A stretch of DNA of 64,000 nt from Lytechinus pictus. Lineage: Eukaryota. The stretch is taken from positions 32,984,001 through 33,048,000 of the forward strand of contig NC_087245.1 in NCBI RefSeq assembly GCF_037042905.1, read 5' to 3'. Each line of letters opens with the position of its first letter. Within the stretch, counting starts at the first letter, position 1. The position numbers and the translations under genes were made by a program. Below are positions 9,201-31,800 of this stretch, in pieces. The notes below the pieces were generated by a model. The model saw only the letters and a program-made list of their open reading frames with translations. It had not been told where the DNA came from and ran no database searches.

Positions 9201-12200
9201 CCATTAAGAGAGAGTTTAAAAATCAATATCCTCAGATAAAGAAGAATCAATCTCTGGAAAGAAAACTTTACTTGTTTTTTTTTTACAAAACTGTTAAAAT
9301 CCCAAACCTTCTTTATCTTCTTCATCTATCTCTTCTGGGGCCCGTTGCAGAAAGAGTAAAAAACGTAAGTAAAAAAATAAATCGCAAGTCCAAAATGCGC
9401 GCTGTTGATTGGTTGAAAATCAAGTTACACATGATTTTTAGAGTTGCGATTGATTGCAACTCTTTCTGCAACGGGCCCCTGACCATTCTGATCCTTGTTA
9501 ACTTACTTTCCTGTTCTCTCCAGCCCTTCGTGCTCTCCGTTATGTCCTCCACCCCCTCCTCCTCCTCCTCCTCCATCTTCTTCATCTATCCCTTCTGCGT
9601 GTCCATTGGGAGTTTGGAAGTGGGACAATCTCTTGGCCTGCGACGGTACCGTCTTGGGCGGCTCAATTCTGATGTTCGGATCCCATGCACCTACAGACAG
9701 AAAAGTATTTTTTAATTAGCTCTTGGGCAACTCATCGCAAATAACCTTAACTTTTTTTTTTATTGGATAGGCACTTAATTGTTAATATGTAAAAGAAGAT
9801 GCTATGTGTACATCACATGTATAATAACTTCTTTTACATAAATATAAAAAAAGCAAAACCGTAAGAGTAATTTTGTAATCTCTGAGTAGAAAAGGAGAAT
9901 GTTACAAGGACACACTGGAGAACCATGCCATATAAATTTTACATGAAGGTATATACAATGTACCAGGGTGATAATGCAACAACATCCATATGTAACTTAC
10001 CAGGTGGAAGAACTGTAACAGAGTCAATGAATTCATCGATGCCTGCAAGAAGGTCCTTGACGTTCTTGGCTTTGTAAGCAACATCATGGAAAATCTAGAG
10101 ATACAGTAGAAAACATTGGATATTTGGGATTTAATCATCTATAGCTTAATTTGCTCTATTTATTCTCAAGCTTCTTGAAAGAAAATAAATATATATGACT
10201 TAACTAAAATGTGCACACACAGAGAAGAAACCTTGAGATTTAACAAACATTGTCTGGTTATTAACATTTTATAAGAGCAGGTTATACTGTTTCGCCTGAT
10301 GCTAGAATATAAGTTTGCAATTCATGACTTTTCTTCAAGAAATTGCAATTCAATTTGTTGTTAGGATCCATACCTTATCTGACATGAGAGTTGCAACGCA
10401 TCTCCCGATCTCATGGTATCGCTTGGTTCCCCCGGACTGCGGGCCGAGGAGGATGAAAAGGAACCTGGTCGGGATGGGGACTTCCGTCAGGTCACCGAGG
10501 GACACCGCCGTCTGGAGGCGAACGAAAGCAATGATCGGACGTGACAGGAAATCCACCTCGCCGATCAAGACGTTGGAGGCCTCCGCACCCTGGGGGATCT
10601 TCCGCATGAAACTGTGCCTGGCCTGGATGTGACGAGAGGGGATAGGAAGAAAAATGAACAAAGCTAAAGGATGTGCCGGTGATTTGACCCTTCTTTCAAG
10701 GGTGTTAGCAAACTGGATAGCATTTGATGAAACCAAGTATCAGTGATTTTTCATTGTACGGTATATGTACTAATCTCCTTGCATTTGATTGGCTCGAAGC
10801 ACGAGTGCCAATGAAAATCACTATGTGTTTACTGAAATGCTTCTCAGATGAAGAAAGAAATTAAAACACAATGTTCTTTCTTTAATCAGGGGCCACTGAA
10901 CTGTTTTGAAAGTTTGGGGGGTGTCTGAAGTCCCCTAAGCTCCCCCTGTTTTGGGGACCCTATAAGTTTATCAAACAACTGCAATGGGGGCAAGCAAGCA
11001 AGCAATGTTCTGAATTTTGCAACTATTATTTAAAGTGATGTTATCTCTTTTTCATATCCCAATGATTTTGTTAATGATCATTTCACTTCATCATTTGAGT
11101 TAAATAAAGCTATCATCTCAAGATTAGAATATGTAAAGCATTATTTGGCCTTGCTTATAAACGGTATTTTAATAGAACAGTCAATGAGTACCTTATCCAG
11201 TCGATATACTCTCCAAAACATCAGTATTACTACTACTACTACAGTTATTAGTATTATTATTACTGTTATTGTTGTTGTTCTTATTATTATCATCATCATT
11301 ATTGCACTGTGTGTAAGCAAGGCCTCAATGTTAACAAAGAGCACATAACATGTTAGTATTGCCATATTCCAACACAAGACACAAATGTAGCAATGCAAAG
11401 ATCATTAGTAAACCCTTTCCCACTCCATGGCGGGTTATACCACATGAAAGAGCTTAATATGTACATGATGATTAAATACATAATTCAGTGCTAGTATGTA
11501 ATGATAACCAAGTGCATGATTGTTAGTATTAATGACAGCAAAAAAAGATTTGTTAGAAATACCCAATCACCAATATGAATATTAAAATGGATATGAAAAG
11601 GAAGAAAGTCACACATTAACAACTAATTACACAGAATTAAAGCGATATATGTGGTAAAATCACCTAGTCAAAAGGAAGAAATGAGCATGAATATGGTTAG
11701 GTATTCAGTTGAATAGGTTCTTTTGTAGATGACCAAGAAATCCTGCGAGTTGGAGGAGGCATTGGTACATGCAGAGAGACATACGATGTGAAACATTGTA
11801 TATTCTTCCCCAGAACCATGACAATACTGAAATCACTATGAGAAGGCAGTACAGTGTACATCAAAGAAAGGAAATAAACACCAAACCAGATATAGGCACA
11901 ACAGTCATGACTACACATTTAAGCAAAGTAATTAGTCATAGAGTTGATGTTTATGATTGATTGCAAATTATCAATACGATCAAACACTCAAACCATCTCC
12001 TCATGGACAATCAATCGCTAAGCTTCATGTTATAGACCCTGGTGGGTGTTTTATAAAGCTGTTCGTAAGTTCGGAGCAACTTTACAAACGGCTAGTGATC
12101 CCCTCTTGTGGTAAATTTTGCGCACCCAATTTTCATAGGTGTTAAAATCAGCTCTTCGGAAAGGATCACCGGTCGTTTGTAAATTCGCTCGTAACTTACG

Positions 12201-15200
12201 AACAGCTCTATGAAACACCCATCGATTTCTCATTTCACAATAATGGTTAACTCTATCACTATGGTAACTACCATAGTGACAGGACACAGCAGCCATTTGA
12301 CACCAAGGTTTCCATGGTAGTTACCATACCCATAATCATAGCTCTTTATTAATCGGGGGCCTCGTGGTTACATAATCCAGGTCAGATTGTATGTTCATTG
12401 CAAGATACATAATTAACCTACCGTAAAAAAAAAGAGACAGAGAGCGTAAAGGTCATAAGAAGTTCTCTCTGAACATCTTATTGTTCCGAAAATTAATTAC
12501 TGTACCTAAACACAGAGCTTGGTTAAAAGAAACATTTCAAAAAAGAAAATCTCTTGAAGAAGTACTGCTTTAAATAAAGAAAGACAAATAGGTGTCACAC
12601 CATCCAGTTGTTAGATCACATCAATATCATCATAAAAAAAGGAAAGGAGAAATGGAAAAAATATATTAAAGAGAAAGAAAATATGAATTAGACAAAGATA
12701 TCAAATTGAATAAGACTAAATGTTACAGGTTGGTGTTCCATAAAGCTTTTCATAAGTTACGAGCAACTGTATGAACGACTGGTGATCCTTTCTTAGAAGC
12801 TTAATCAACACCCAGGAAAATTTGCAGTATATCATTTACCACAAGAAAGAATCACCAGTCGCACGTAAAGTTGCTTGTAGCTTAAGAACAGTTTTAAGAA
12901 CGACTGGTAAACCTTTCTTATGCGCTAAACCATTGCCAGTGAACATTTTGGTGTCTACCATTCACCACAAGAAAGGATCACCAGTCGAACTTAAAGTCGC
13001 TCTTAACTTACAAACAGCTTTATGAAACACCCATCAGGTAAGCACTTGTAAACAAGATTTGCATACTATTGCAAAGTATAAGAAATACAATGCAGCCGTA
13101 CATGTGAAGGTTGCATGAATGTTTCCTGATGGACGAAAGCTTTCTTTTGAAATTTCCATGAACTGTTGCAATTAGTTTTGTAAAGCAAATCCAAAACTTG
13201 TCATCAATATACTCAAAATTCATGTATTACCCAATGTAAGAGTCGTCAACTGCAAACAAACAAATCTATTTTTTTTTTAATGAACATGTTTCAGATTCAC
13301 AAAGATGTAGGTCAATTGTTGATTTGTTTTTGAGGTCTGAGTGGGTGCACTCTAATACAATTGGGACTTTCACACAAGTGCAAGGAAGTAACGCTGTTGA
13401 CGTAGTACCATACCTTTGATGATCGTTTTAATTTAAACGAGTTCTCTGATTTATTAGAATGGAGGGATCCGGATTTACTTGGGACGGAATGGACAGACTT
13501 TGAAAAGTAAAATAAAAAAGGAAGTCATGAAGAAGAAAAAAGAGGCAAACATCAATAAATAAACTATACATCAATCCAGTAATGAAATAGACAGATCTTT
13601 TTGGCAAAATAAACCTGGATCTTTCCCCTTCCCTTTTTTTTTGGGGGGGGGGTATTCTCATACATTGTAAATGTCCAGATGTGAAATTTTATAATCAGCT
13701 TTAATAATATACGTTCATATAAATGTATTAATATTCTTAATATGAACTATTTCTAAGTGCCCCCCCCCCCCCGTTCTGTATTTACTCTGGCAACTTGATT
13801 ATGGCCTGTCCCTGCATTTCCTCTTTTGATCATGGCTATATAATCTTATTTGTTTATTACTAATTTTTCTTACATCAATTAAACAGATAATGGTGTGCTC
13901 TTTATACAAGTGTATTTGATCATTTTTTAGCATGAATAACATGCAATATGACCTCTATCAAAACACATTTTCATATTACTTACTTATTTAAATCTGCCAA
14001 TATTCATGATGAAAAATCTAGATATATTGTAATGTGATTCTAATTAAGTATACAACTTACATGTACAGTGATCTTTTCCAACATGGAAGATAGATAAACC
14101 AAAAATCATATTAATAGTCATTGAATATCAATGAAATTATTAAGTGCAGATGTATATAAAATCACATCAGTGCAGTGTGTACCGTATATAAAAAGAGATT
14201 CAGTCTGTTTATTGATAGAGAAATAGGAAGAATCAACAGCAAACAGTGTGATTACACAAAATATCGTGAATTGTACAAATTAACTGTATTCATTCAATAC
14301 CTTAATGAAAAAAAAAACATTATCTGGAGATATAAGCAAAACACCATATGAACATTAATTCCGCTATTGAGCTTCATATTTTCCATTACTTTGAATTTTA
14401 CGGGTGAGGTCCTCTGGAGACACGACCAGGGTCCCGTTGCATAGTAACTTTGCCATCCAATGGTAACTGCCATGGTAACAAGGCTCAACAGCCAATCAAA
14501 ATCAAGGATTCCATGCGAGTTACCATAGGATAGCAAAGTTACCATAATGGTAACTTTTATTCAATGGGGCCTTTGTGTCGGTTTTAACATCCAAGTTTTG
14601 TACAGTGTATTAAAGGTATCAATTAAACACTTATTTTGATTGGCTAGCTCGCTACATGAATATATTCATTCAAACCAAGGTCACATTACTAGACGCTATT
14701 CCAATAACTTTCTACCACTTAGTCACATTAGCTTACCGTAAACTAGTTACAACTTAATAACTTAATGACTAATAACTAGATAACCTGGAAGTTATTTTAC
14801 TTCATCAATTTTCGCAAGTGAAGGTCATTAAAACAGTTTCCCTCCTTTTTGATGGCACATGTATTTTCAAACTAAACAACAATTACGGTACTGAAAATAT
14901 AGATAAAGTAACACCTTACAAAAACAAAAATACAAAACTGATTTATCTGCCTACCAATATGATAATTCTTAGCAACACCATCAGAGAAGAATAAAAGTAA
15001 AAGTAAGGAATAAGCAGCGAGGATTATAGATTTACAGTCAGACATTGACATTAAGATTTCAAAGGTGTTCAAATAATCACTCATCACAGATAGGAGTGCA
15101 GAATATAGAAATCTGACATTGAAAGTAAATCTAAGTATTAAGTAGGTTTTGAAAGTTGCTTTCGTTATATTCAAAAGTGTGTTTTTTCTTAATAATATTC

Positions 15201-18200
15201 ATTTATACAAAGTAGGAATATCTTTTACCCATTAATAGGTTATATTCAAAAGTGTGTTTTTTCTTAATAATATTCATTTATACAAAGTAGGAATATCTTT
15301 TACCCATCAATAGTTTTTTTTTAGATAATAATTTTGGAGTGAAATAGCCAAGGTAAAAAAAAAATGTTGGTTTTCAATGTAAATTGTATCATGAAATTTC
15401 TTTAGCTCTAGTCATTGACCGGGGGGGGGGGGTAGATAAGAATGGAGTATGAATTATCATGAATGGAGCATGAATTATCAAGATATTAGATTAGGCGATA
15501 ATTTGAATATTTCAACCCCAACCACCATCACTGCAAACGTTGTGTCAGAAAACACATCCCATTATAAGTGCTTTCTAAAAATATACTGTTTAGAACCACA
15601 AATACAATTCTTAACATTTTGCCACACACATTTTCGCTCATAAAACCAAACTTTCACTTTTTCAATCCTTTTGAGAATATTGAGCGTGATAGCAGATGGG
15701 TAATTAGTGTTCCTGAACCAAGAATATCACAAAAATATGTGCCATGTAAACAAAGCGATTGCCATGACAACATACCTTGGACCTCTCAAACCTATCAATA
15801 AGATGCGCTCTGTAAAGTCTTGGTGAATCCACTTTGACCGAGTGGAAAGACTAAAAGTAAACGAACAAATTGTAGGTCAGTAGACATGGATCACAATTTT
15901 TATAATGATCATAAATCAACGATGGATAGAACAAAAATATCATGGACCATGTTGGAACCTTCCGGCATAATCCTGGGATTGCCGTGCGGATCAATTAGGG
16001 TTGTGTTTATACGTGGGTGGTGCTTAAGACAGTTCAGGGAATTTCAATGTTTGATGTATTTTGTCTTTATCAAATCACTGAGTATTGTGTGTGATGGAAG
16101 ATATCTATAAATCCTACTCTAGTGCATTATATGAATTGTGAAATTAAAAAAGTAATGCTTCAACTATTGTTATCTTCTTCTTATAAAATCACTTAAAGCC
16201 AACATGTAAATGTTGCGGTCACCGGTAATGATTGTTTCATGTTCTCTCAAGTATTACACAACCCACATTATCAATCATGTCTATATTTATTTTCTCTGCT
16301 TAAATTTATTGGTTGTTTATCTGTGTATTTATCTTCCTTTTAAAGGTCAAGTCCACCCCAGTGAAATATTGATTTGAATAAATAGAGAAAAATCAAACTA
16401 GCATAACACTGAAAATTTCATCAAAATTGGTTGTAAAATAAAGAAAGTTATGGCATTTTAAAGTTTCACTTATTTTTCACAAAACAGTGATATGCACAAC
16501 TCTGTGACATGCAAATGAGTCAGTCGATGATGTCCATCACTCACTTTTTCTTTTGTTTTGTTATTGTTTGAATTACCGGTATACAATATTTCATTTTTTA
16601 CAGATTTGACCATAGGGACCGACTTGACTGAATCACATAGTATTAAACAATGCTAATTCCACATTTTCAGGGAGAAATTGATCACTGTTTCACTTGACAA
16701 TGAGGAGAAACTTAGGATATTTCATATTTCATGTAATAAAATACAAAAGAAATAGTGAGTGGATGACGTCATCAGTCTCCTCATTTGCATACCAACCAGG
16801 ATGTGCATATAACTGTTTTGTGAAATTAAGCGAAACTCTAAAATGTCATAACTTTCTTATTTTACATCCGATTTTGATGAAATTTTCATTGTTATGGGTG
16901 TTGGATTTTTTACTTTTTACTCAAATCAATTTTTTATTTGGGTGGATTTGTCCTTTAATGTTCTATCAATTATTATTATTACAGACCAATTCTGGGTACA
17001 TGTAGCTTGGTCGGGGAGGGAGACCCTCGGGTCACAGTTATCAAGTTAGCTTTTCCCATACCCAGGCAGCTAAGCTACATGTACCCATCTACGGCTCTGC
17101 TTTTATTCATACTTTGTTGAAATTTTATTGTATATTGTAATTGCCGAATTGATAATAAATAAATAAATGAGATGAAAGTTTTCCCAATACAATCCTATAC
17201 ACTGTAGATGTCTGTAGTACAACTGAAATACACAATACTTCTTTAAAAGGCATGTCTTGAAAAAAAAAAACAATTATAAAAAAATCCCATCCAACTCTGA
17301 CCTGACATTGAGAAACATTTTGGCAGTGTTGTAAATTCAATATTTAACACACTCATGATTAATTTGATAATTAAGACAATAATAAAGGGATAACGTACAC
17401 CCATTACATTTATCTGAACTTGTCAATTGAATTAGTTTTGTGCCCCACAGCAAACTCTGCACAAATCTAGTTATTGTTTTCTTTGAAAGTTGCCTATTTT
17501 TTTTCACTGACATCATTTAACAATATTGTATAAAAGAGTCATGTCACATCATAACAACACACTGAAATGAGAGATAAGGATTCAAGAAATGAAGCAAATG
17601 TGAACTAAAGATGGTAGATTAATTTCTTTTGTTTTATCTCTTTTGTTTTATCTTTTGTTTTATCTCTTCCTAGTTCACTTGTTTTATTTTATTGTGCTCA
17701 ACATCAAACACCATTGAGGTGATACCAGTCTTTGTTTTAGCATAGTGTGGTGCCAAATAAGAAACCCTTGAACAATGCATCTATGAGAGGATTGAAGCCC
17801 GGACTTGTATTGTTAGTAATCATTGTAATCTGAGACAGTTGGGCTATTTGGAACTGTTGAGAGCAAGTTTCTATAGTTAATATCTGTATCACAAAGGCTA
17901 TTGTAATGGTGTTGAAGAAAAGCAAGTTATATACAGAGTACCATATATGGCACTTCAAAAGTATAAAAAGAGACTGTGCCATTAGGTCATTGAAAGTTTT
18001 CCAAACGGATCTATATTGTGGTCAGTAGAGAGACACCCTGTGCAGCAAATCAACTCGTTACCATGGCAACACATACCTTAGATCTTCCATGTCTAAAATC
18101 CAGCTTATGTTTAATGGATTCTGGTTTACCTCTATGATAGGATTCAAGAGACTAAAAAAAAAATGAAATAAAAAAAAGCAAAGATGAATGGTTTATCCCA

Positions 18201-21200
18201 CCAATTCTAATCAATTACCATAAAAGAATAATTGACATCATCAATTCTTAAACAAGAAGCGAGACATCTTGTTCAAATCATCACCTTTTTCAGGAAGAAA
18301 TTGTGATATAAACACATTTCATGAAGGACCAACATGTATGTTACTCAATAAGTCTTGTTGACAGCAAGGGAGTGCATTCCCTAGGGAATCGAGTAAGAAC
18401 ATTCAAGAGTATGAAATTTTATGATAGATGTCTAATTTGAATATCAAAACAATTTTTTTTCTGTCATTGATATTGGTCTCTTAGGACAATTTGTGAAAAC
18501 TATAATGAAATGAATCAATAGAGTAGCAAAGTGATGCCTCACAAAATATTGTTTTTGCATTTCAGCATTTTTTATACCATATCTTGGCAAGGCATGATGA
18601 AAAACACCCACTACCAAAAATTTGTTGGGAATCGGTCCATGGGGGCCTTAGATATGACCTCCTGAATACATAATTAGCCCCACTGAAGTCGATGTATTGG
18701 TTCCTGACGTTTAGAACCAGGCCAATTATACATTTGATGTCAATTGGGCTAATTATTAATTCATGACGTCATATCTAAGATATCCAAGGCCCCCATGGAC
18801 CGATTTCAACCAAATTTGGGTTGTAGAGGTACATGTATTTCATCATGCTCTATTAACATATGGTATCAAAAACGCTGACATGCACAAAACAAAAATTAAT
18901 GACGTCACACTTCGGTACTCTATGGCAATGACAAAATCATAATAAGGGAGAATCAGAAGAATGAATAAAAATGGCCGGAAACAAAGAAATAAGTCTCCCA
19001 TCCACTTGAAGAAAAAGAATAGACATATGTAGCTTTCCTCTTGTCTATAAAAATATAAAATATTTTGGACAAAATATATAAAATACAAAATATTTTGACC
19101 AATCCCAGTTATGTATGTAGGCGTGTACATGACTAATCACTTCCTTTCCATAATGTCTCACTTCAGAAATTTATCGACCGAACAGTTTTATTTTGCATGC
19201 ATCTATTTCCACTTATCATATCAGGTTTCCAAATTAATCATATCAAAATATATTTCAAGTTAATTACAGCTGGTGGAAAACACAAACATCATTTCGTTAT
19301 ATCATTAACGGAGGAGTACAGAGTATGTTATTTACGAATAGTGTGCTGTGGCTATTCATCTTGTACTTTCATTGCACAAAATGCGCAAAATCTACAAATA
19401 ACGAATAAATTTTCAGTGGAAATTTCTCAGTTAATAAAATGGAAGTCACTGTTATCTACCTACTAGCTGAAATTTCAACTTATACCTCCTACCACCACAA
19501 AAAAAATCAAATAAACTCTTCCGACACCCCACCCTATATTTATGAGGATTGCTATGCTAATACAAACGTGCCCTCAGCAAAGTAAATGCTGAGATACATC
19601 ATATAGGCCTGCCATATAACATCTGGCAATGCAAAACACAGACAATGACACAAAAGTTATGTAATCATTCATTCATGAAACATAAGCAGTTTAACGTTAG
19701 TCAAACTCAATCAAAAGGGTAGAGACCTTCTCCACTTCCGCAGTAATTCCTTTTAAAGTAGAATTTATCTATGCATTAAAAGAATGGGAGATATTTGAGG
19801 GTTATTCTGCTCATTTACTAATGCTAGAATCAATTGTAGATCTGTTTGTACAGGTGAAGTGCATGCACCAAGTGCTTTTCGAGTGTTTGATAAAAAGCAG
19901 CTGTTGAGGTCATAGCACAGGTGCGAATGTGAAATTTGATCCAATGTTATTAAGAAGAGCTTTACAAATTAGATCTCTGGGTGCAATAACTTTTTGCATG
20001 ATTTAAATGTCCATTTGCTTATTTAGTATAGCTCTAACAAAAAAATATTGGGTAATTTTGCATAATTCAGTATATTCTAAAGTTACAATTTTAATCACCA
20101 GTCACAATAATGAATTCTGTATCAAGAAAATGTAGTGATGCGTATTGCTAATGAGCTTTACCATATCAATAAATAATTGCAAATTTGATTAGAAAATTGA
20201 AATTTTCTCAGAATAATGAAATGCACAGGAAAATGCAGCAATTTTAATTGATTTTTTGTTCCTTTGCAAGCCTTCCAAGGAGTGAGACGTGAATATTTAA
20301 AGCGAATGTGCTTATTTCATGAAATAAATGTCAATTTGGGATTTCTGAATTCACCAGCCATTATACAATCACACTGTGTCAAGACAACTTGTCAAGATAT
20401 AATTTCAGTCAGCGGTTAGGAATCATTTCACAATAATTGATCCACATTGTGCTGCACTCAACCCAAGTGAGGTAAATGGGTACCCAGCAGGATATGCTTG
20501 TGTGCTGTACAAAAAGGCTGGCTGGATAGGGTAATATCTAGACTCTATTTGGACATTGGATATCTGTTATATGAGAACTTGCTATTATCATTATCAATAG
20601 TAAGGATAGTGAATTGTTTCTACATTGTTTACATGGTTGACTTTCTGTTATGAAAATGAATAAATTGCAATTGATTTCTTAATGCAATATGAAAATGTCA
20701 ATCGAACTGATATGAGAGTATGTCTAAATGAAAATTGCATGTATTTGTTTAGCGTTGGAAGGGACCCGGTAAGTCTAAATGCAAGTTCATGAACATTTTT
20801 CTCAATTTTTTTAAATAAATATTTATAACAAATGAATAAGCCCAACTTCAAAGCACATCTATCCATGGAATATCATAATTATATATAAAGTTGTGTCTTA
20901 CTGATTCCATTGCAATGATTACGACCAAAAAATATTCCTGGCAAATTAATGGTTTGTTGTTGATATGGGCTAAAGGAAAACTGAGATATCACAGAATAAC
21001 GCATTTAACATCCTACTGAGCAGTAAAATCATTAAGCAGATCTAAAACTATTTAGAAATGGAATACTTAACAGATGAAGGAATAGACTAAATATCAGAAA
21101 GAAATAAGCACAGATTAGTAAGCAGTTTGCAAGTGAGTAGAGCAAGAATGATGTATCACACGCACAAACACAACATCTCGTTAAAATGGACATGCAGCTG

Positions 21201-22826
21201 GCACTATATTGTTTTTTTACAAGTCATATAAAGAGCAGCGAATTCAAAAAAATAAACACCATGATACCCATTTAAAGCAGAGAAAAGGGTTAAATAATCA
21301 TGCAACAATTGTCAAAGCTGTTATAAACATGAGTAAATATTAGTAAGGTGAAAATTGCATTTATTTTATTTTTAATTATTCATGGCTATCATTTCTAATT
21401 TCATCTTATCATTTTTTTTAAGAGGGGAGTACTGAAACTTGATTCTCGTTTTCTATTTAAGACATTTCAGAATTCAGATGATACATTTTCAACTGCACAT
21501 TTTAATTCAAAATGTTGTTGTGCTAAATATATTATGGTAGAGAAAAGAAACATTTTCTCTAACTGCGAATACAAAGAGATCACTGATGCAACATTAAGAA
21601 ATGCAAGAGGTTTGTAATGGCAACTGGGACTGGTTGCACAAGAAGTCACATTTAAATGCAAATAAAAGCAAATTGAACACAAGTCCTTGCTTCACACTGG
21701 ATGAGAAACAAGTGAAGTTGATTTTCTTCAGGGGCATGTTGTAGAAAGAGTTGTGCTCAAACGCAACTAAAAAAATCAAACGCAATTGTCCCATACCAAC
21801 ATTTCATTGGTTGAAAATTAAGTTTGTGATTGATTTTTGGAGTTACATTTGATCGCAACTCTGTCAGCAACCGGACCCTAAGCGGCATATAAATGCAAGT
21901 TTATGCAGGAGAGCCCTGGACCCTTGACTTATCGTAACTATGGAAATCCTGCAATAATTATCCTCATAATGTTTGTAGAGAGGTTCACTGAAATGATCAT
22001 CATTCATATAATTAATTGATTATGTACATCACTATTTTGGTCAACCATACATGTACATATGTTTCTAATAATATGTCGATAGACTCCAATAGTTGATATT
22101 AAGTGGATCAATCGAAAGTTAGATCTCAGATGTGTGAATGCACATACCAGTCACATTTTTATAGCAAATCTGTAGTCATCTGAACCTGCACAAGCCACTC
22201 ACAAATGCCTGCTGACAGCTCAACAAAAGGGCGTTGAACTTATCTCTTAAAGTTATTAGTATGTCATCGTGAAACATGGAGGTAGAATTATGTAAAGCTG
22301 CATCAATTCTGAACTTCTTACACAGCAGAAACTGCGGTGTTGATTGGTGTATACATAGAGGACATCACCAGTCATTTTACTCTGGTGTTTAGTATTCAGC
22401 GTTAGTTCAACACCCATCATGTTATGACAACACCATTGGCAGTTATTTTACACACTTTGGTGTTATGTTCAACCTCTAGGGTGAAGTTTTGACACCTCAG
22501 GGTGTGATTACAACACCTTTGGTGTTATGTATAATCTCTAAGGTGCAATTTTAACACCTCAGGGTATGGTCCTCTACCAAATGGTGTCAATTTTAACACC
22601 GCAGGGTTTACAATGTGCAATCAGGGGAGTGTTACAAGTGCTACAGTAGCGAATGGTATATTTGTGCTTATAAACACCCATGTTGTCTGCTAGTTTCACG
22701 ATGACATACTACCTTTACAGCTAGCCGAATGAATGCCTTTTCTTATTTTATCGGTAAAAACAGAAGACAACAGTAACGGGACAATACATACAGCCATGCA
22801 GATGGGCATGCAATATCAGAAGGTAA

Positions 22827-22861
<35 letters not shown>

Positions 22862-25800
22862 CACAAACAATTCACATAATGCACATTGAGTGCCATGCAA
22901 ATATATTGGTAGTAGATACAAGAGAGGAAGGGTATATTACAAAGAAGTATTTGAAGAAGAAGTTTTATGGGAAAAATATGACTTTTTTTTTCATTAAACC
23001 ATATGGATGACGTAATAATATTATGAGGAGCTCAGCATTATGGGGAGGGAGGAAGCTGAAATAATTTTATAACATAGGTAGGCATGAACAGGGGCCTGGA
23101 GATTTGATCTACTTTGTATTCAATTTTGCTATCATCTGTAGAAAGAGAATAAATCTCGTATAATGGAGTAAAAGCTAGCAGTTTCCCTTTCACTAAAAAA
23201 AAAATATGTTGCTAAAGTCAGCAATGAATTCCTTTCACTTTTGATCAGACAAAATTCATCTTCCACAGTAAATTACATTATGATATTAGAGCCTATCGAG
23301 AGAAAGGTACATGTACCCCACTTTCATGGCACCACAAATGGTGGAAAAGTAGAAATGAAAACTTTAAATTAGCCTCCAAAATTATCAAGGATGGGAAATA
23401 TTATCTGTTTTGTTTTTGTCGAACTTTGTTTATATTCGCTCGCAAAGGCATGAATCGTGTAGAATTATAATCGAGAATCTGAACTAAATATGAAGATAAA
23501 TTCTGCAAGATTTCGATGGAATTCCCAAGTTATGTCTAGTTTCTTAAGATGTCTGTGAGACCCAGGGAGGGGAAATTTGTAAAACTTCTGGTTCTAAATC
23601 AACCACCTGGGGATAATGGGAGGGTCCCATCAAAATGTTGCAGAATTTATCTTCACAAACTTCAGATTCTTGATTCACAATTCTGTATAATTTGAACAAA
23701 GACTAAATAAAAATAAATAATCTTACTGCTTTTAAAGACATAACCAGTTTGATTTTTCATTTCTAATGATTAAAACATAATTCAATGGGCTTTCGCAATC
23801 GTTTGGTCACAATATATGTTGCACTGAGTCGTACCACCAATTGTGAAAGGGGCTTCAATGGAGGCTCAGAAGCAAGGAAATTGGGGGGGGGGGGGGCGAG
23901 GTCGAAGAATGAATGAGGGGGAGCATGGAGGGGGAAATCAGGATGAGGAAGAGGCACAGAGGAAGGCAGGAGGGGGAACAACAAGCACATATATCATGTA
24001 AAATCCAAGAGCAGTTATCATCTTTAAGAATAAAAAAAAAGATAAATAAAAAGATAAATAAAATTTGTCGAACCGTCATACTAAGACCCTGGAGGTTTTG
24101 CGGCAGAGACATTCTAGCTTCACTCAGTCTTTTCTGTGAGAGGGGGAAAAACGACGCCACAAAAAGCAGCAGCGGAGAAAGAAAAACCATGTCACATCAA
24201 ACAGAATTATATATAGCAAACATCAATATAACACCAAGACCATGCAAATAAATAATGTTAGAATGGAAGTCCTATATATACTAAATAGTGTAGCATCAGT
24301 ATACCGTGATCGACTCCATTCAAATATGATGATAAATACAGGATCTTAAAGGTAGGATATTCATGATATTTCTATTCAATGGAATGATAAAATCTATGGG
24401 AAAATAATTCAAACTTAGTGATGAACTCATTATAGCTTAGCTAACATATTAGTGCATCTAAATTTTTAAAACTGTTTCAATTGTAGGATAATTTGCAGCT
24501 AATTTCTTACTTTTTTTCAGTGAAAGTTTTAGTGAAATGCTTGAATGCATTTAACTATTACATACACTCTTTTAGCAATACATTATAAACAAAACGTTTC
24601 TTTTTAATTGGCAACAGTGAAATTAGCTCACTCTTTTTTAAAACATTCTTTTCATGGTGACATTTCTTGGTCATAATCTGACATACCTGCAAGCATTTTT
24701 TACAAGGATGAAATTTATTAACAACCTTGATGAAAAATGCTTTGTAGAAATTATTTCATTTAGCTTTAATTATTTAATGTCACTTTTCATAGCTGCTTCA
24801 TGAAATTTTTGCAAAAATAAATCAATAAATCGACAACTTAGCAATGATTTATAAAAGCTGATCACCAATTCAATGTGACCAGTGCATTGTGACGAGTTTC
24901 ACTTTAAATCAAAGACTTAAATATTTTCCAAATTATTACGAAAATGGAGTTATGAAAACTTAATGAACAATTTAAAACCAAATAACAAAATCAAAGCTTC
25001 ATCAAAACAGTGCATATAAACATGAAAAGTTTTAAATTCAAAATTCAGGTGCCATTGCTGGATTAGGAGTTCTCACCAAAGCAGGATGGAGGACTTTTTC
25101 ACGAAATGTATTAGTGAATGAAATGACAATGGATACACATGAATGAAAATGTTGTTAGTTACAAATAATGATGCAATGGGCAGATTGTGATGATAATGAT
25201 AAAATGGTGGCAGAGGTGGTTATGATTGAGCATGACGAAAAAGATGATGATGAAAATGATGACAACTACAACAACGATGTTTATGACGAATATTATGACG
25301 ATGATGACTATGACGACAATAATTATGATGACAATGATTATTAAAATTACGATGAAAGTGATGATGATGGTGGTGGGGAAGAGGAAGATGATGATGATGA
25401 TGATCAGATGAAGATGATGATTGATGATACATATATGATGGTGTTGATGTTAATGTTAATGTTAATAAAGCTATCATTTTCTTGGTGATGGTGGCAATGA
25501 AATCATGATTTGAATAGTCATTATCATTCTAACAGCGCTCAAAATAATGCTGTGAAATTTACTCCATATTGTTATATTCATGTTATATATTGTTTCAATG
25601 ATTTCTGAAAGATTCACAAGATTGTGCAATGTCATAATAATGTGATATCTGTGATGAGTTCATCTGCATCACAGAAGATGGTCAGAAGAATGCAAAAATG
25701 TGATGAAATTAAAAAGATAAGTTAACACGATAACTATGCAGGTGAAATGTACATGACCACTGACAGAAGAAAGAGAAGGACATGCACGTACATGTATGAG

Positions 25801-28800
25801 GGTTTATGAAATTAACAAAGGCAGAATGAAACTAAATAAGTTCTTTGTCAATTCTCAGTAATATTCATCCAATGAATACATCACCTTATGAATAACTTCA
25901 ATAGACTATAATTAGATTATACTGTTTTTATGCCCTTTTCTCATCTCATATTGAATTTCAATTATAGAAACCAAAGAAAACCATAATTTAATCCAAAATG
26001 ATATGTTTGAAATTAGCAGGTTGATTAATTACCAAGACAGTTGGTTAAAGTTGATAGAGGATAACTAATTTTCAACTAACAACTCTGATAGGAGCTGGGA
26101 AAGTGGAATGTGACTATTATTAAGTGCATGGAGATGACTAGTGAATGATAAGAGAAAAGAAACAATAAATATCAATCAATGCATCTCATACCTATTTAAA
26201 CACATTTAAAAAAATCAAGTCTGAGAATCAAATTTGTCTGAAATGACAGTATCAATAAAACTGGCACTATTGACAATGAGCAGGGAAAAACTGAAACGGG
26301 TGCTCGGGATAATCTCGCACCTGAAATGGTCAAAAGAGCCATGGAGACTCAAAAGGATGCCCTGGAGCTCCATCCATTGCAATGATATTAAGCTTATCCA
26401 AAGTTGCAGATTTAGGCAGTAAATTGTTGAAGTAACCTCGAAAAGATATATATATATTTATTTTTTTGTAACAATGAGGTATGTGACACATTGAAGAAAT
26501 GAATTGTGGGTGAACACATAAACAAGATGACATGGTGATCACATGGTGAAGTGAGCATGAAAGGAGGGCCAGAATGGAATCCTCAAAAGATGACAAAGAA
26601 CAGAAGGAAAAGTAGAGTGACATGAAAAGGCTCGGCAGAAACAGCAGCTTGGTGCTTTTTCTTTTTCATGACTATGACCACTGAGAGAAAAAATAAATCG
26701 GCTATGACCAGAGAGAAAACGTAATCCAGCCTGCTTTAAAACAGCAAAATTCACCACTAACACCTTCAAAACATCATCAAAAACTCATCAAAACAAGGAT
26801 AACCAACATCAAAACACCTGCAAAACAAGATGACATCTTGACCAAGAAAATGAATTAAATAAATAAAAAAATCATGAAATGGATGGTTACAGCCAGTATG
26901 GTTGCAGGTTGCACGTTGGGGAATAAAAAGGAAAGCAAGGCACAACACCTTTATGGATTTTTATTAAAAAGAATAAACACCGTAAAATAAACGATAAGGG
27001 GAAAAAATGAAATTGGAAGCCAACCGAGAGACTATGTCCGTGTAGGTTGTGCGGGATGGAGAGACGTGCTTCACTGAATCTTTTCTGTGGGGGAGAGAGA
27101 CAAGAAAAAAAAGCCAAGATACATAGAGGGCAGGTGTGTTTGCACTACTACACATTATCCACATCAGGGGTGCTACCACACTTGGTATAAAAAACAAACA
27201 GTGTGGATGAATATACAAAGCACAGTCAAATCAGACTTGCACAGCTCAATGGACAAAAGATGTCACAAGAATTCATGTTTTACATTCATGAATTTTTTTT
27301 CTTCTCCTAAATAACATGTTCCAAAATCAATGCAGAAATTTATTGATATTCAGTTGCTGCACATACATGTTAAAGTATCGCTGCTATGCCAGCTCAATTA
27401 TCTGCGTTAGTTTGGGTTATTCCGTGAAATATTTGTAAATGTAAAATCTGATTTATGAATAAGTGCTGTGTTTATTCATAGGACAGTGTACTTTCAAGTA
27501 AATTCCACACAAGAAAAGTGACATTTCAACAACAGAAATTAGCCTGTTGAATAACAATTGGAAAAGGTACGAGGTGTAGGTTCGTTGTCAAAAAGCGTTT
27601 ACTTGCAAACGTAATTCAGTCCCGCTTCATGTAAGTGAAGGACCATGCATCATTTAATACTGCCCAAAAGTTGCATGAATTGTACCATTCATATTATCTA
27701 CATGTAAATTGATTTCAGACTTGTTAATCATGAGAACGTCATTTCTTCCCATATGGAATTGACTCAAACTAATATTTCAAAACCAACAATAACCAGGAAA
27801 TTTTACATTTACATGTACAGGGCACAAGATATTACACTACAAAGAAGTGATATTTGATGGGGACATTGACAAATTAACAGGTGTAAATATGGGAGCAAAC
27901 TAGAAATCATATTTTACTACTAATATGTTGATAATGACATTACAACATAATGAACAATAGAGGGCAGTATATCCACATTTTTTGTGCAAAGACATGAGAC
28001 TGCATGTATTTCACAACAATTTTTGCTATACAAATCTTCATGAATCTGTATCTACCCAGTACTAAAGGCGATTATAAAAATTACATATCTACATGTAAAA
28101 ACACACAAATGTTCACACAACAATGAAATATGTATTAGAGGGAATTTTGGATTCTTATGAGCAAAAATATTTAAATATATACGACACAATTAATCAGTAT
28201 ACATTAAATTGTTCTTAACTATTATTCCATAAGTAAATGCTTCTACCAAAATAAAAGCCTACTGCAACTAAAATAAAAAGGCCACTTCAATATGATTTTA
28301 ACAGTCAAATAAACAATGCATAAATATCTACACTCGTCATGCATGAAGTTTAAACACTATTATGTATTGTAAAGTACAGAATATACATGTACCACACTAC
28401 CACATAAATTTTAGGCATTTTTTAAATATATCTTATTCATACTAAAACTTAATAGGAAGTAAAGATTAATTCTCACAATAAAAAAAAATCTAATCCATTC
28501 ACAGGCTATTATTGGTGGTTATGATTATGATTATATTTTCCAATTCAATTTTTTAATACTTCACATCGAAACTGTCTGATAACACAGTCAATATAAATAA
28601 TCATTACCTGTATCAGACATCAGGGTCCTGTTTCATAAAACACTTGTTGCAACAACAAATAGACAACAAATTCATTATCAACCAATCAGATTGAACGATT
28701 TCAGTAGCTTTTTACTGTGTTGCAAATTTGTTATCATAACAAGTTTTATGAAACGGGTCCCTGGGCAGGTAATTTACAAAACTGTATTGCCATAGTATTT

Positions 28801-31800
28801 TACGAACATTAGGAATGAATGGGTTAAATGGTTTGTATTTTGCTTAGTCACTCTGCACGCTCTGACTCTGCATGCAGAGACGATGCAAAATATACCTTTG
28901 AATTTTCCATGGATTCGCTTCCGGGAACCTGAAGACGTGTGCAAAGGGATACGCATCAGTTTGAAACAGTTACGTGCAGTAACAACATGCGTCACAATGA
29001 TTGATAAATACGTCACAAAGGTAAAGCTATGAGATATTGGTATAAACATCAATAGTAAAATATCTCCAGGCATCTTTATTATTTTGCTCTATACTGACTA
29101 GCTCTACTTTCAGGGAGCATCAAATATAAAAGAACTTTGTTGCCCTCATCTAAAGACTCGGAACAATATGATTCTGTTCGGAAAACATATTTGGTGTTCC
29201 CCTCAGGCCTTATTCGTCTATTCACATGATGAATTTTATATTACAATTTACATAAGGTAAACTTTGATTTGTATTTTTTAACCTTTGCAATGACTAAATA
29301 TTAAGTGCAAATACACAAATACATGTACAGGTATTCTTGAAATAGATTCTCTTACCAGCTACATTCAAATATGTATTCATTTTCTTCCAATTCAATACAA
29401 ACTTACAAAGTGGTTTGTCAATCGTTTGCCACTGCTGGTAGTGATTACTTTATCCACACATATTTCACAGAGATAAGCCCATCAGGACGTTTCCTTTCCA
29501 AAAATGTCTAGGTTTATAACGATCCCATTCCTTTATCTACTGATGTACATGTAGTATTACATTACTCTCATGTTTTTAAATACTGCACTTTAGAAATATG
29601 TAGGTATATGAGCTGTCCTCTGATTAAAGATTTGTGTTTGTCTTTAAAGAAAGCGTGTAAGCTCCCTCTTTTTATCAAATTTAAGTAACATTAAAGAAAT
29701 TGTGTCAAATGCACTCTTAATAAATTGATGTTACCTTTATAGAAAGCATGCTAACTTCATTCCTCTTTTAATCAAAGTTACCATTGTAAAAAAAACATTG
29801 TTTTTTTAAAAAAACCTTTATAATAAGCATGTGATCTGCCCTCTGTCAATAATTAAGGTTACTTTAAATCCTTAACAAGAAAATGGGGACTAGATCGAGG
29901 TTGGCATAGAGTCAACTTATAAAAGACCTTCCTGGTTATTCCGAACATCGATGAAAGAATCAGGAAAGAGGGCGAGAAACATTAATGTGAAAGAGGATTC
30001 CAATTTTTTTCTCTCTTCATAAAATGACATGATCAATTTTTCATCAGGGACTTTTATAAAAGTCGAAACCAGTTGCTTCTTTTGGGGGTACAGGTGGGTG
30101 ACTCATGATAGCGAATCGATTGTCGGAAAAAACAAAATGTGGTTTGGACCACAACCAAGTGTCTTTAAAGCACCTACATCTCACCAACCTCATTTCCAAA
30201 TGACTATATTTTTTAATGTTCTACAACTTAGAATATAATATCCATTGGAGTATTTCCCACCTGATTGTCATGCAGTATCCTAAATATAACTGATCATTAC
30301 AATATCAAGATATTTTATGTTTAATGTGTATTTAACGTCTGATTTAAACTTGACTTGGAAATCAAACAATTTATTGGCTACACTAACATAATGGATAACT
30401 TCTAGCCGTGTAATGTAAAATTGCACCAATTTACTCATCTCATACCCTACTCTTTGACTAATTTCCAATATTTCACAAAAACAAATTATATATATGTTAA
30501 ATACCAACAGACCCTTAATAGTTCTTTACTGACAACCATTCCTTTTAATGTGTCTTTTCACGCAATATGATCTAGAGCATGAGATAGTTCTAAATGACTC
30601 ACTTCTAATTCACACAAATGTCATAACATGTTTAGGCTTTCCCTGTCAATGTACTGGCAATGCTGTGTTTCATTGTTCATTTCAATGATTCATTGTTGTT
30701 TTTCAATAGTACAGGTCATGACACACACTACCACCTTACAAAAATGTCTGAGAACAAATGTGAACACTTATTTTAACCTTGGTTCTCATTTTCATGTCAA
30801 CGAAAACCTGAAGACATTTTCTATCTACTTCTTGATATTAGTGGCAAAACGATTAAGTACACACTTTAAATTGACTGCATAAATCACCTCATACATCTCT
30901 TTAAAGAGCATCAATTACCTTTTCTACTTTGTGGCTTATAATCACCTCTCATTATATATACGAGCAAGGACATATATCGCCATGGTAGCCAAATCTATAT
31001 CCATGGCAACCTAACAAGCACTAATATCGGTGCGTGGAGATCCTTGGGCAATACAATATTCTTGGTAGAAAAAGATGAAATTCTAACCTCCGTCAACACC
31101 TTGTACAAGAACAGAAAGAGAGAGAGATAAAATGAGATATCAATTATGGTTAGTATTCATCAATCACCATGGTAACGTACCTTTAGACTGTGATGACTTG
31201 AGACCTTGGGGAGACTCCCGGATGCACATGTATCTGACTTGCCTAGTTCACCGGAGCTGGTCTTGACCATGAGTGAGCTAGGGGAGGTTTGGCTGTTCTG
31301 TATGTTAGGGGATGACCCATGGGACGTATGTAGTGCCCCTTGAGCAGCTGGTGGAGTAAAACAAAATAATCATAAAAATAAACAACCATCACAAAATATT
31401 TCTTTAACCCTCCATATATTGTTACAATGATTTTGAAAATATCTTCCAAGTGTGGACCAGGGAGCATTCCATCAACCTGACAAGTTGTCAGATCTGACAA
31501 GTATCCTTGATTGTGACTGACTGAGAAGCAAATGTCTGACTGTTACTATGGTAATCGTCAGAGAATGACATCTTATCAGTCCTGACAACTTTCATGAAAT
31601 GGAATCATGAAGTGATGATGATGATGATAACTTCATAATTATCATCATCATCACCATCATCATCACCATCAATCATCATCATCTATCATCATCATCACCA
31701 TCATCATCATCCTCATCATCATTTATCATCATCATCATCATCTATCATCACCATCATCAATCATCATCATAATAATTTTTTTTAATCTGTAGTAAGAATT

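What the first reader, a model, noticed from the sequence alone, without database searches (positions are those of the whole stretch)
10623..31180. Hidden array of up to seven symmetric cassette exons in the N-terminal variable loop of the SLC4 transporter
Seen: between core exons 31181-31347 and 10374-10622 (a phase-0 junction) lie short stop-free segments with pyrimidine tract/AG and GT sites. All are multiples of 3 and phase 0-0: 31016-31099 (84 nt), 28896-28928 (33), 27025-27084 (60), 24074-24133 (60), 18077-18151 (75), 15776-15850 (75), 13414-13497 (84). The peptides are Ser/His/Lys/Arg-rich and four end in SK with AAG|GTAT. Established: vertebrate NBCe1, NBCn1 and NBCn2 carry only one or two optional cassettes in this loop, just before the HFMKKIP motif. 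Inference: a lineage-specific combinatorial or mutually exclusive splicing module (up to 2^7 in-frame combinations) tuning a pH/bicarbonate transporter, a family implicated in sea urchin skeleton calcification.
Basis: partly seen in the sequence, partly recalled or inferred. Interest (0 to 1): 0.85.

Follow-up and report, generated by a model that had tools for sequence, protein, structure and literature searches.

The report
Alternative cassette exons in urchin bicarbonate transporter
Five of the seven proposed small exons, plus a sixth minor one derived from a repeat, are real optional exons that lengthen a floppy loop of a sea urchin sodium-bicarbonate transporter, but public gene models already contain them and the seventh is not an exon.

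Summary
The sequence features are exactly as described. The window matches the Lytechinus pictus RefSeq isoforms at 100% in most exons.

**Cassettes A-E are real.**
- A is 27025-27084, B 24074-24133, C 18077-18151, D 15776-15850 and E 13414-13497.
- RefSeq models of L. pictus, L. variegatus and S. purpuratus use them in at least 14 loop combinations. They are combinatorial, not mutually exclusive.
- They are 98-100% identical between the two Lytechinus species, against 87% for the surrounding intron.
- Reading frame and splice sites are kept in S. purpuratus (pN/pS about 0.35).
- A/B and C/D/E are two families of tandemly duplicated exons.

**The other two candidates.**
- The 33-nt exon (28896-28928) lies inside a dispersed repeat. 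It appears only in one L. variegatus model.
- 31016-31099 is not an exon: its frame and acceptor are broken in S. purpuratus, it diverges like intron, and it has no RNA depth.

**Context.**
- Starfish have a 1.4-kb intron here with no cassettes.
- The cassettes lie in a loop predicted to be disordered. They are rich in Ser, Lys, Arg and His and carry KRxS/RxS motifs.
- This gene is the orthologue of the cloned S. purpuratus NBC cDNA. It is not the skeleton-forming SpSlc4a10, which is the tandem paralogue.

The result is an ordinary, already-annotated elaboration of known SLC4 cassette splicing.

The parts
31181..31347 (-). Constitutive exon upstream of the array (...[13 protein letters not shown]), ending in phase 0
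   Evidence: RNA contigs of three runs end exactly at 31181.
31016..31099 (-). Candidate 'X': not an exon. Conserved non-coding intron sequence or a decayed exon relic, with a weak donor CTT|GTTAGG.
   Evidence: In S. purpuratus the frame is broken by indels and the acceptor AG is lost. Lp-Lv identity is 90.5%, like intron, and 6.5 of 8 changes are non-synonymous. It is absent from all 28 protein models inspected. RNA depth is zero in 4 runs. Its words occur in only 2 runs, both from a study whose library also holds intron contigs.
28896..28928 (-). Mini-cassette ([11 protein letters not shown], 33 nt), an exonised piece of a dispersed repeat
   Evidence: Present in L. variegatus isoform X15. 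It lies wholly inside a repeat with at least 347 candidate copies in the genome. There is no S. purpuratus counterpart. No splice joint was seen in 4 runs.
27025..27084 (-). Cassette A ([20 protein letters not shown]), with a weak conserved donor CG|GTTGG
   Evidence: Present in RefSeq isoforms and in the cloned S. purpuratus cDNA NP_001073019.1. An RNA contig joins 31181 to 27084. It is conserved down to Diadema.
24074..24133 (-). Cassette B ([20 protein letters not shown]), a paralogue of A, with donor CG|GTTCG
   Evidence: The peptide is identical in S. purpuratus despite several nucleotide changes, mostly synonymous (pS 0.29, pN 0.02). It is present in Diadema.
18077..18151 (-). Cassette C ([25 protein letters not shown])
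   Evidence: RefSeq isoforms. It matches L. pictus X1 at 100%. It forms a conserved island against S. purpuratus (86%).
15776..15850 (-). Cassette D ([25 protein letters not shown]), a paralogue of C and E
13414..13497 (-). Cassette E ([28 protein letters not shown]), a paralogue of C and D
   Evidence: An E-like candidate exists in Diadema at L003:27754-27810.
10374..10622 (-). Constitutive exon downstream of the array ([19 protein letters not shown]...), where the folded N-terminal core resumes
   Evidence: Matches NBCe1 6caa_A residues 227-307 with E 7e-33, and also NBCn1 and NDCBE.
31167..31176 (-). Copy of the donor-flank motif GTTRYCATGG, about 5 nt into the intron after the upstream exon. 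Further copies are at 31001-31010, 18061-18070, 15762-15771 and 14470-14479.
   Evidence: 5 hits on the gene strand against 0.16 expected. The same positions carry it in L. variegatus, and the upstream-exon and C copies also in S. purpuratus.
27830..28002 (-). Conserved non-coding intronic island. A second one lies at 29929-30033.
   Evidence: Alignable to S. purpuratus at 72-74% while the rest of the intron is not. Neither island has a conserved reading frame.

Best explanation
The 20.5-kb intron holds a lineage-specific module of optional exons in an SLC4 Na-coupled bicarbonate transporter gene. The gene is the L. pictus orthologue of the cloned S. purpuratus 'sodium bicarbonate cotransporter' cDNA.

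**Shown:**
- Five phase-0/phase-0 cassettes (A-E; 20, 20, 25, 25 and 28 residues) are included or skipped largely independently of one another.
- The optional part of the loop therefore ranges from 0 to 118 residues.
- A sixth exon of 33 nt was recruited from an interspersed repeat and is minor.
- The array grew by tandem exon duplication: A gave B, or the reverse, before the Diadema split. C, D and E are copies of one ancestral exon together with its donor flank.

**Inferred:**
- Each cassette adds Ser-rich, strongly basic sequence carrying basophilic-kinase consensus sites (KRxS, RxS, and RSK|S formed across exon joints).
- Splicing would thus set how many regulatory phosphorylation or docking sites the transporter carries. 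It would tune activity or surface expression as the NBCn1 cassettes do, without touching the transport domain.
- Conserved weak donors of A and B, near-invariant synonymous sites and conserved flanking intron suggest that inclusion is regulated.
For: **Identity of the gene.**
- The window's exons translate at 100% to L. pictus RefSeq isoforms.
- Those proteins carry PF07565 and PF00955.
- The downstream exon matches NBCe1, NBCn1 and NDCBE structures.

**Use of the cassettes.**
- 28 models or cDNAs show 14 different loop compositions, from none to A+B+C+D+E.
- The cloned S. purpuratus cDNA NP_001073019.1 and two full-length transcript contigs carry A only.
- One RNA contig joins 31181 directly to 27084. 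Contigs of two other runs leave 31181 without touching A.

**Selection.**
- Between L. pictus and L. variegatus, A-E have 2 differences in 354 nt. Intron background is 87.3% identical, and only 0.35% of 75-nt intron windows reach 98.7%.
- Against S. purpuratus, the frames and AG/GT sites of A-E are kept, with summed pN/pS about 0.35 (0.098/0.28).
- Otherwise unalignable introns show conserved islands around each cassette.

**Duplication.**
- A and B share 70% identity over 110 nt, reaching into the intron.
- C, D and E align across acceptor, exon ends and about 45 nt of donor flank.

**Age.**
- Diadema has A, B and an E-like candidate.
- The Asterias intron is about 1.4 kb with no cassette.
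- Starfish and sea cucumber models join the two flanking exons directly.

**Loop properties.**
- In the AF2 model, residues 134-330 have pLDDT below 50, between confidently folded cores.
- [RK][RK]x[ST] motifs number 3 in 127 loop residues against 2 in 1080 elsewhere. The loop is 21% Ser, with 25 K+R against 9 D+E.
Against: - Most combinations come from automatic Gnomon models. These chain junctions that were each seen in RNA but not necessarily together in one molecule.
- I saw only one splice joint directly (upstream exon to A).
- The single raw-read RNA run laid had no reads on the gene.
- No phosphorylation, binding or transport data exist for any cassette. The motifs are short and common in basic Ser-rich sequence.
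- pN/pS of 0.3-0.5 for A, C, D and E is only moderate constraint.
Confidence: 0.85

Rival explanations
1. All seven segments, including 31016-31099, are cassette exons, giving up to 2^7 forms.
For: 31016-31099 has AG/GT flanks and an open frame in both Lytechinus species. The region aligns to S. purpuratus at 73%. Its words occur in two runs of unknown kind from the same species.
Against: - In S. purpuratus the frame is destroyed by several indels and the acceptor is lost.
- Its 9.5% Lp-Lv divergence is intron-like and mostly non-synonymous.
- It is absent from all 28 models and cDNAs.
- It has zero depth in four runs, including ones where the gene is well covered.
- Its peptide is hydrophobic, unlike the other cassettes.
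- The two runs holding it belong to a study whose libraries also hold plain intron contigs.
Confidence: 0.05
2. The duplicated exons form mutually exclusive clusters, one of A/B and one of C/D/E per transcript, as in arthropod Dscam-type arrays.
For: The exons are tandem duplicates of equal or similar length. A-only and B-only forms exist. Self-complementary motifs sit at several donors.
Against: A+B together occur in models of all four echinoids. C+D, D+E, C+E and C+D+E also occur. All exons are phase 0-0, so joint inclusion keeps the frame, and there is no frame-based exclusion.
Confidence: 0.03
3. The variants are splicing noise or annotation artefacts. One loop form is functional and the others are rare by-products.
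For: Gnomon combinations are inferred. The cloned cDNA and two transcriptome contigs all show the same A-only form. The mini-exon is repeat-derived and seen in one model only.
Against: Every one of A-E has kept its frame, its splice sites and near-invariant sequence, including synonymous sites, over the Lytechinus-Strongylocentrotus distance. A and B have done so back to Diadema. Contigs with and without A both occur at appreciable depth.
Confidence: 0.07

Closest known systems
Vertebrate NBCn1 (SLC4A7) optional cassettes I, II and IV in the cytoplasmic N-terminal domain
   Same: It has optional in-frame cassettes in the N-terminal cytoplasmic region of a Na-coupled bicarbonate transporter, used combinatorially (16 functional variants). 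They alter activity and surface expression, and cassette II binds calcineurin (PMC4464172). The urchin array sits just before the same FMRKIP motif, which is NFMRKIP in NBCn1 9ovr_B.
   Different: The urchin has five short paralogous cassettes (20-28 residues) made by tandem exon duplication. NBCn1 has unrelated cassettes of 13, 123/124 and 20 residues. No sequence similarity to cassette II was seen in the loop alignment. No calcineurin-type PxIxIT motif was noted. No functional data exist for the urchin.
NBCn2 (SLC4A10) 30-residue cassette A and the NBCe1 (SLC4A4) 9-residue cassette
   Same: Each is a single optional cassette in the N-terminal cytoplasmic region of a close relative (PMC4464172).
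   Different: They are single cassettes, not an array, and they are not duplicated exons.
S. purpuratus 'sodium bicarbonate cotransporter' cDNA NP_001073019.1 / ABC00768.1
   Same: It is the orthologous gene. It is 89% identical over residues 230-440 of the L. variegatus X14 query, and its loop contains cassette A. By date and name it is probably the clone of Gunaratne et al. 2006, Gene 375:37. That reference is cited in PMC13218627; I did not read the paper itself.
   Different: The cDNA shows one isoform only (A-only). The other cassettes were not part of it.
SpSlc4a10, the skeleton-forming transporter of primary mesenchyme cells (PMC5986267)
   Same: It belongs to the same family and is the tandem neighbour on the same chromosome.
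   Different: It is a different gene. Its epitope maps to G000:C1:32890282-32890362, about 94 kb before the window's start. There the distance from the epitope exon to the FMRK exon is only about 1.3 kb, leaving no room for such an array.
Exonisation of transposable-element fragments (for example Alu exons in primates; from general knowledge)
   Same: The 33-nt exon with both its splice sites lies inside a dispersed repeat. It is lineage-restricted and rarely included.
   Different: The repeat family was not classified here.

Membership tests
SLC4 Na-coupled bicarbonate transporter (NCBT) | Band_3_cyto (PF07565) N-terminal domain plus HCO3_cotransp (PF00955) membrane domain | tested here: met
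   The RefSeq isoforms whose exons the window encodes at 100% carry both Pfam domains.
SLC4 Na-coupled bicarbonate transporter (NCBT) | Closer to NBCe1, NBCn1 and NDCBE than to the anion exchangers | tested here: met
   For the downstream exon: NBCe1 E 7e-33, NBCn1 1e-31, NDCBE 4e-31, against AE2 2.5e-24 and AE1 about 1e-18. This rests on one exon only.
SLC4 Na-coupled bicarbonate transporter (NCBT) | Na-dependent HCO3- transport | not testable with these tools
   Needs expression and pHi or current measurements.
Alternative cassette exon | AG...GT flanks and a length that keeps the frame whether the exon is included or skipped | tested here: met
   All candidates are phase 0-0 multiples of 3.
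Alternative cassette exon | Transcripts both with and without the exon | tested here: met
   For A this is direct: the joint 31181-27084 occurs in one run, and contigs of two other runs skip A. For B-E and the mini-exon it rests on RefSeq models and cDNAs only. For 31016-31099 it is not met.
Alternative cassette exon | Exon conserved above the surrounding intron, with frame and splice sites kept in related species | tested here: met
   Met for A-E. The mini-exon is conserved only within Lytechinus. 31016-31099 is not met.
Mutually exclusive exon cluster | Exactly one member of the cluster per transcript | tested here: not met
   A+B, C+D, D+E and all five together occur in models of several species.
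SpSlc4a10 (biomineralisation transporter) | Encodes the published antibody epitope LTRHRHHKQKKKKEPENKAYNKGRRKS | tested here: not met
   The epitope maps at 100% to the tandem paralogue. This gene has [20 protein letters not shown] at that place.
Transposable-element-derived exon (mini-exon only) | Exon and both splice sites lie inside a dispersed repeat copy | tested here: met
   A 161-nt query centred on the exon gave 347 candidate copies. The 40 scored were 75-82% identical and mostly covered query positions 3-129/157; the exon is at positions 33-65.

The most novel reading that the evidence does not exclude
The self-complementary 14-mer GTTRYCATGGYRAY may be a coordinating splicing element. 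It sits about 5-8 nt into the intron after the constitutive upstream exon and after cassettes C and D. A degenerate copy follows E, and further copies lie at 31001-31010 and 14470-14479. Copies could pair with one another, or bind a dimeric factor, to decide which donors are used. That would be a docking/selector-like logic applied to a combinatorial cassette array in a deuterostome.
Probability: 0.1. Interest if true: 0.6.

Novelty: new member of a known kind. Interest (0 to 1): 0.3.

Why it matters
Optional cassettes in the N-terminal loop are a main way in which vertebrate NBCn1, NBCn2 and NBCe1 are regulated. The urchin gene shows that the same intron position was independently expanded, by tandem exon duplication, into a five-unit module of disordered, basic, Ser-rich segments.

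That makes it a convenient natural series, from 0 to 118 extra residues, for asking how loop length and phosphosite number affect an NCBT. L. pictus is a tractable system for this, being a genetic model urchin whose embryos allow microinjection. (Both points are from general knowledge.)

The result also corrects a likely confusion. The calcification gene SpSlc4a10 is the neighbour, not this gene.

Because the exons are already in RefSeq and the phenomenon is expected for the family, the finding is useful but not surprising.

Tried and rejected
1. **31016-31099 as an exon.** Rejected.
2. **Further hidden cassettes.**
   - The conserved islands 29929-30033, 27830-28002, 24942-25466 and 11310-11359 have no conserved frame.
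   - Three other pattern-matching ORFs (23835-23864, 17712-17780, 14345-14413) are no better conserved than intron.
3. **Raw RNA reads of the sister species (run X24).** No reads fell on the gene, so nothing was learned about junction counts.
4. **Search for short transcript-derived protein fragments spanning the loop.** It returned no urchin fragments.
5. **Looking up L. variegatus isoform X14 as an encoded gene.** Not on record. The longest isoform had to be used instead.
6. **Homology of the cassettes to vertebrate NBCn1 cassette II.** None is visible in the loop alignment.
7. **Hairpin reading of the donor motif.** Pairing of positions 4/11 and 5/10 is not consistently kept between species. 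I checked this by eye on the sequences, so I make no claim of covariation.
8. **Three literature searches.** They found no paper describing these urchin cassettes. The library is incomplete, so this is weak evidence of absence.
9. **Earlier notes of this scan.** They held nothing on this gene.
Full report
**1. Observation.**
On the minus strand, all seven segments have the stated lengths, an open frame 0, a pyrimidine tract plus AG upstream and GT downstream. Four end in ..SK with AAG|GTAT. The upstream exon 31181-31347 ends in phase 0 with ...SSHHSLK. The downstream exon 10374-10622 begins [10 protein letters not shown].

The pattern alone is weak evidence. A strict AG/ORF/G|GTR filter gives 8 hits in the intron against 2.2 +/- 1.7 in shuffles, and half of those 8 are false.

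**2. What the gene is.**
- The downstream exon matches NBCe1 (6caa_A residues 227-307, E 7e-33), NBCn1 and NDCBE.
- An exhaustive search with it found a 1218-residue protein identical over that exon. This is L. variegatus 'sodium bicarbonate cotransporter 3-like isoform X14', carrying PF07565 and PF00955.
- L. pictus RefSeq isoforms match most window exons at 100%. The window is therefore L. pictus or an equivalent assembly.
- The first coding exon ([10 protein letters not shown]...) lies at 50983-51060, and the gene runs off the low end of the window.
- The S. purpuratus orthologue includes the cloned cDNA NP_001073019.1 / ABC00768.1. This is probably the sperm NBC of Gunaratne et al. 2006, a reference I saw only as a citation in PMC13218627.
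- It is not SpSlc4a10, the skeleton-forming transporter of PMC5986267. That protein's antibody epitope maps at 100% to G000:C1:32890282-32890362. This is a tandem paralogue whose FMRK exon is 63% identical to this one.

**3. Which candidates are exons.**
I extracted the loop between ...HHSLK and ARHSF... from 28 models and cDNAs. I name the cassettes A (27025-27084), B (24074-24133), C (18077-18151), D (15776-15850), E (13414-13497) and mini (28896-28928).

The compositions found are:
- none
- A
- B
- mini
- A+B
- B+D
- D+E
- C+E
- A+B+D
- B+D+E
- A+B+C+D
- A+B+C+E
- B+C+D+E
- A+B+C+D+E

L. pictus's own models show B+D, A+B+D, A+B+C+D, B+C+D+E and all five. The use is therefore combinatorial, not mutually exclusive. 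No model contains 31016-31099.

These are mostly Gnomon models, so the individual junctions are RNA-supported but the full combinations are partly inferred. The cloned S. purpuratus cDNA and two full-length transcript contigs from Logan assemblies (6.7 and 6.3 kb) carry A only.

**4. Direct RNA evidence (stretch 25450-31400).**
- Contigs from two runs of the window's species and one run of the sister species end exactly at 31181.
- One contig joins 31181 to 27084 (skips 4096 nt, CT..AC on the plus strand, which is GT..AG on the gene strand). Cassette A is therefore spliced directly to the upstream exon.
- The contigs of the other two runs leave 31181 without touching A, the mini-exon or X.
- Depth over 31016-31099 is zero in all four runs.
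- Depth near the mini-exon is only short repeat-like fragments, with no joint.
- The raw-read run had no reads on the gene.
- Words of 31016-31099 occur in just two runs. Both belong to a study whose libraries also contain unspliced intron contigs.

**5. Conservation.**
I fetched the orthologous loci of L. variegatus, S. purpuratus, Diadema setosum and Asterias rubens.

*L. pictus against L. variegatus.*
- Intron background is 87.3% identical.
- Only 0.35% of 75-nt intron windows reach 98.7%.
- A-E are 98.3-100% identical, with 2 differences in 354 nt.
- Synonymous sites are almost invariant, as is typical of regulated alternative exons.
- 31016-31099 is 90.5% identical, like intron, and 6.5 of its 8 changes are non-synonymous.

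*L. pictus against S. purpuratus.*
- The introns are unalignable except for islands around each of A-E, the upstream exon, and a few non-coding blocks.
- A-E keep frame, AG and GT.
- pN/pS is 0.08 for B and 0.3-0.5 for the others. Summed, pN is 0.098 and pS is 0.28.
- 31016-31099 has several frame-breaking indels and no acceptor.
- The mini-exon has no counterpart.

**6. Origin.**
- A and B are paralogues: 70% identity over 110 nt, including about 42 nt of downstream intron.
- A and B share an unusual donor, CG|GTTGG or CG|GTTCG, in all four echinoids.
- C, D and E align through the acceptor (TTTTAG|TCT), both exon ends and about 45 nt of donor flank.
- Diadema has A, B and an unannotated E-like candidate (NEFANHSRSNSFKSKKFSK, L003:27754-27810, tag|...AAG|gtatgtg).
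- In Asterias the corresponding intron is about 1.4 kb with no cassette-like sequence.
- Starfish and sea cucumber models join the two flanking exons directly.
- A crinoid model has an unrelated 11-residue insert at the same junction.
- The array was therefore built within echinoids by tandem exon duplication.
- The mini-exon lies wholly inside a dispersed repeat with at least 347 candidate copies. It is an exonised repeat fragment.

**7. Likely function (inference).**
- An AF2 model of the N-terminal domain with all cassettes gives pLDDT below 50 for residues 134-330. This sits between well-folded cores: 41-100, and 331 to about 430.
- The cassettes occupy residues 202-319. They therefore lengthen a disordered loop.
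- The optional segment is 21% Ser, with 25 K+R against 9 D+E and 10 His.
- [RK][RK]x[ST] occurs 3 times in the loop against 2 times in the other 1080 residues. RxS occurs 6 times against 11. RSK|S sites are created at the exon joints that follow C and D.
- In NBCn1, cassettes change activity and surface expression, and cassette II docks calcineurin (PMC4464172). By analogy, I infer that splicing sets the number of regulatory phosphorylation or docking sites.
- Nothing here tests that inference.

**8. An unexplained extra.**
- The 10-mer GTTRYCATGG is the core of a self-complementary 14-mer. It occurs 5 times on the gene strand against 0.16 expected.
- Four of the copies lie within about 5-8 nt after the donors of the upstream exon, X, C and D.
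- The L. variegatus copies are in the same places. S. purpuratus keeps the copies after the upstream exon and C.
- Predicted duplexes between these flanks reach -20 to -27 kcal/mol, against -6.9 +/- 2.9 for random intron pairs.
- This may simply be a retained relic of exon-plus-donor duplication that acts as a splicing signal. Inter-site pairing is possible but untested.

**9. Verdict.**
Five conserved, duplicated, combinatorially used cassettes are real, the repeat-derived mini-exon is minor, and the seventh candidate is rejected. The exons are already in public annotation of this genome, and the phenomenon is a known habit of the family. I found no paper describing the urchin array, but the library searched is incomplete.

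Noticed in passing
window 31167-31176, 31001-31010, 18061-18070, 15762-15771, 14470-14479 (minus strand): A self-complementary motif GTTRYCATGG(YRAY) lies a few bases after several donors of this array. There are 5 hits against 0.16 expected. The positions are conserved in L. variegatus and partly in S. purpuratus. Strong duplexes are predicted between copies.
   Followed up: partly
window 28800-28960: The 33-nt mini-exon and both its splice sites lie inside a dispersed repeat with at least 347 candidate copies in the genome. Its donor flank contains UGCAUG within the palindrome CTCTGCATGCAGAG.
   Followed up: partly
window 33914-34746 and exon 33580-33687: A 172-nt tandem repeat (5 copies) lies just upstream of the exon encoding [13 protein letters not shown]... 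It carries decayed copies of that exon's first part, at 33813-33869, 34143-34175 and 34658-34702.
   Followed up: no
G000:C1:32888742-32890362 (outside the window, about 94 kb before its start): A tandem paralogue encodes the published SpSlc4a10 epitope at 100%. It has only about 1.3 kb between the epitope exon and the FMRK exon, so it cannot hold a cassette array.
   Followed up: partly
window about 31222-31227: L. pictus has a 6-nt insertion in the upstream exon (DTCASGS against DTSGS) relative to L. variegatus and S. purpuratus. The RNA contig of the sister species lacks these 6 nt.
   Followed up: yes
L003:27754-27810 (Diadema setosum): An unannotated 57-nt phase-0 candidate exon (NEFANHSRSNSFKSKKFSK) lies between cassette B and the FMRK exon. 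Its donor flank is homologous to those of C, D and E.
   Followed up: partly
P0002 (Anneissia japonica) against P0169 (Antedon): A crinoid model has an unrelated 11-residue insert (KRVKTIHMSHE) at the same phase-0 junction. This suggests the intron is a recurrent site for cassette gain.
   Followed up: no
P0226 (Lineus longissimus) loop: A nemertean NCBT loop carries three KRRFS/MRRFS repeats at the equivalent place. This may be a convergent multiplication of basophilic-kinase motifs.
   Followed up: no
L002 about 43930-43969 (S. purpuratus): The S. purpuratus assembly has a 1-nt deletion in the FMRK exon, which shifts the frame. This fits the 'LOW QUALITY PROTEIN' label of XP_030830414.1.
   Followed up: no
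window 29929-30033 and 27830-28002: Two intronic islands are conserved down to S. purpuratus (72-74%) without any conserved reading frame. They may be splicing or transcriptional regulatory elements.
   Followed up: partly
window 16735-16958 and 16340-16565: An 82%-identical inverted repeat pair of about 225 nt lies within the C-D intron. Other palindromic blocks are at 18518-18923 and 12732-13031. These look like inserted mobile elements.
   Followed up: no
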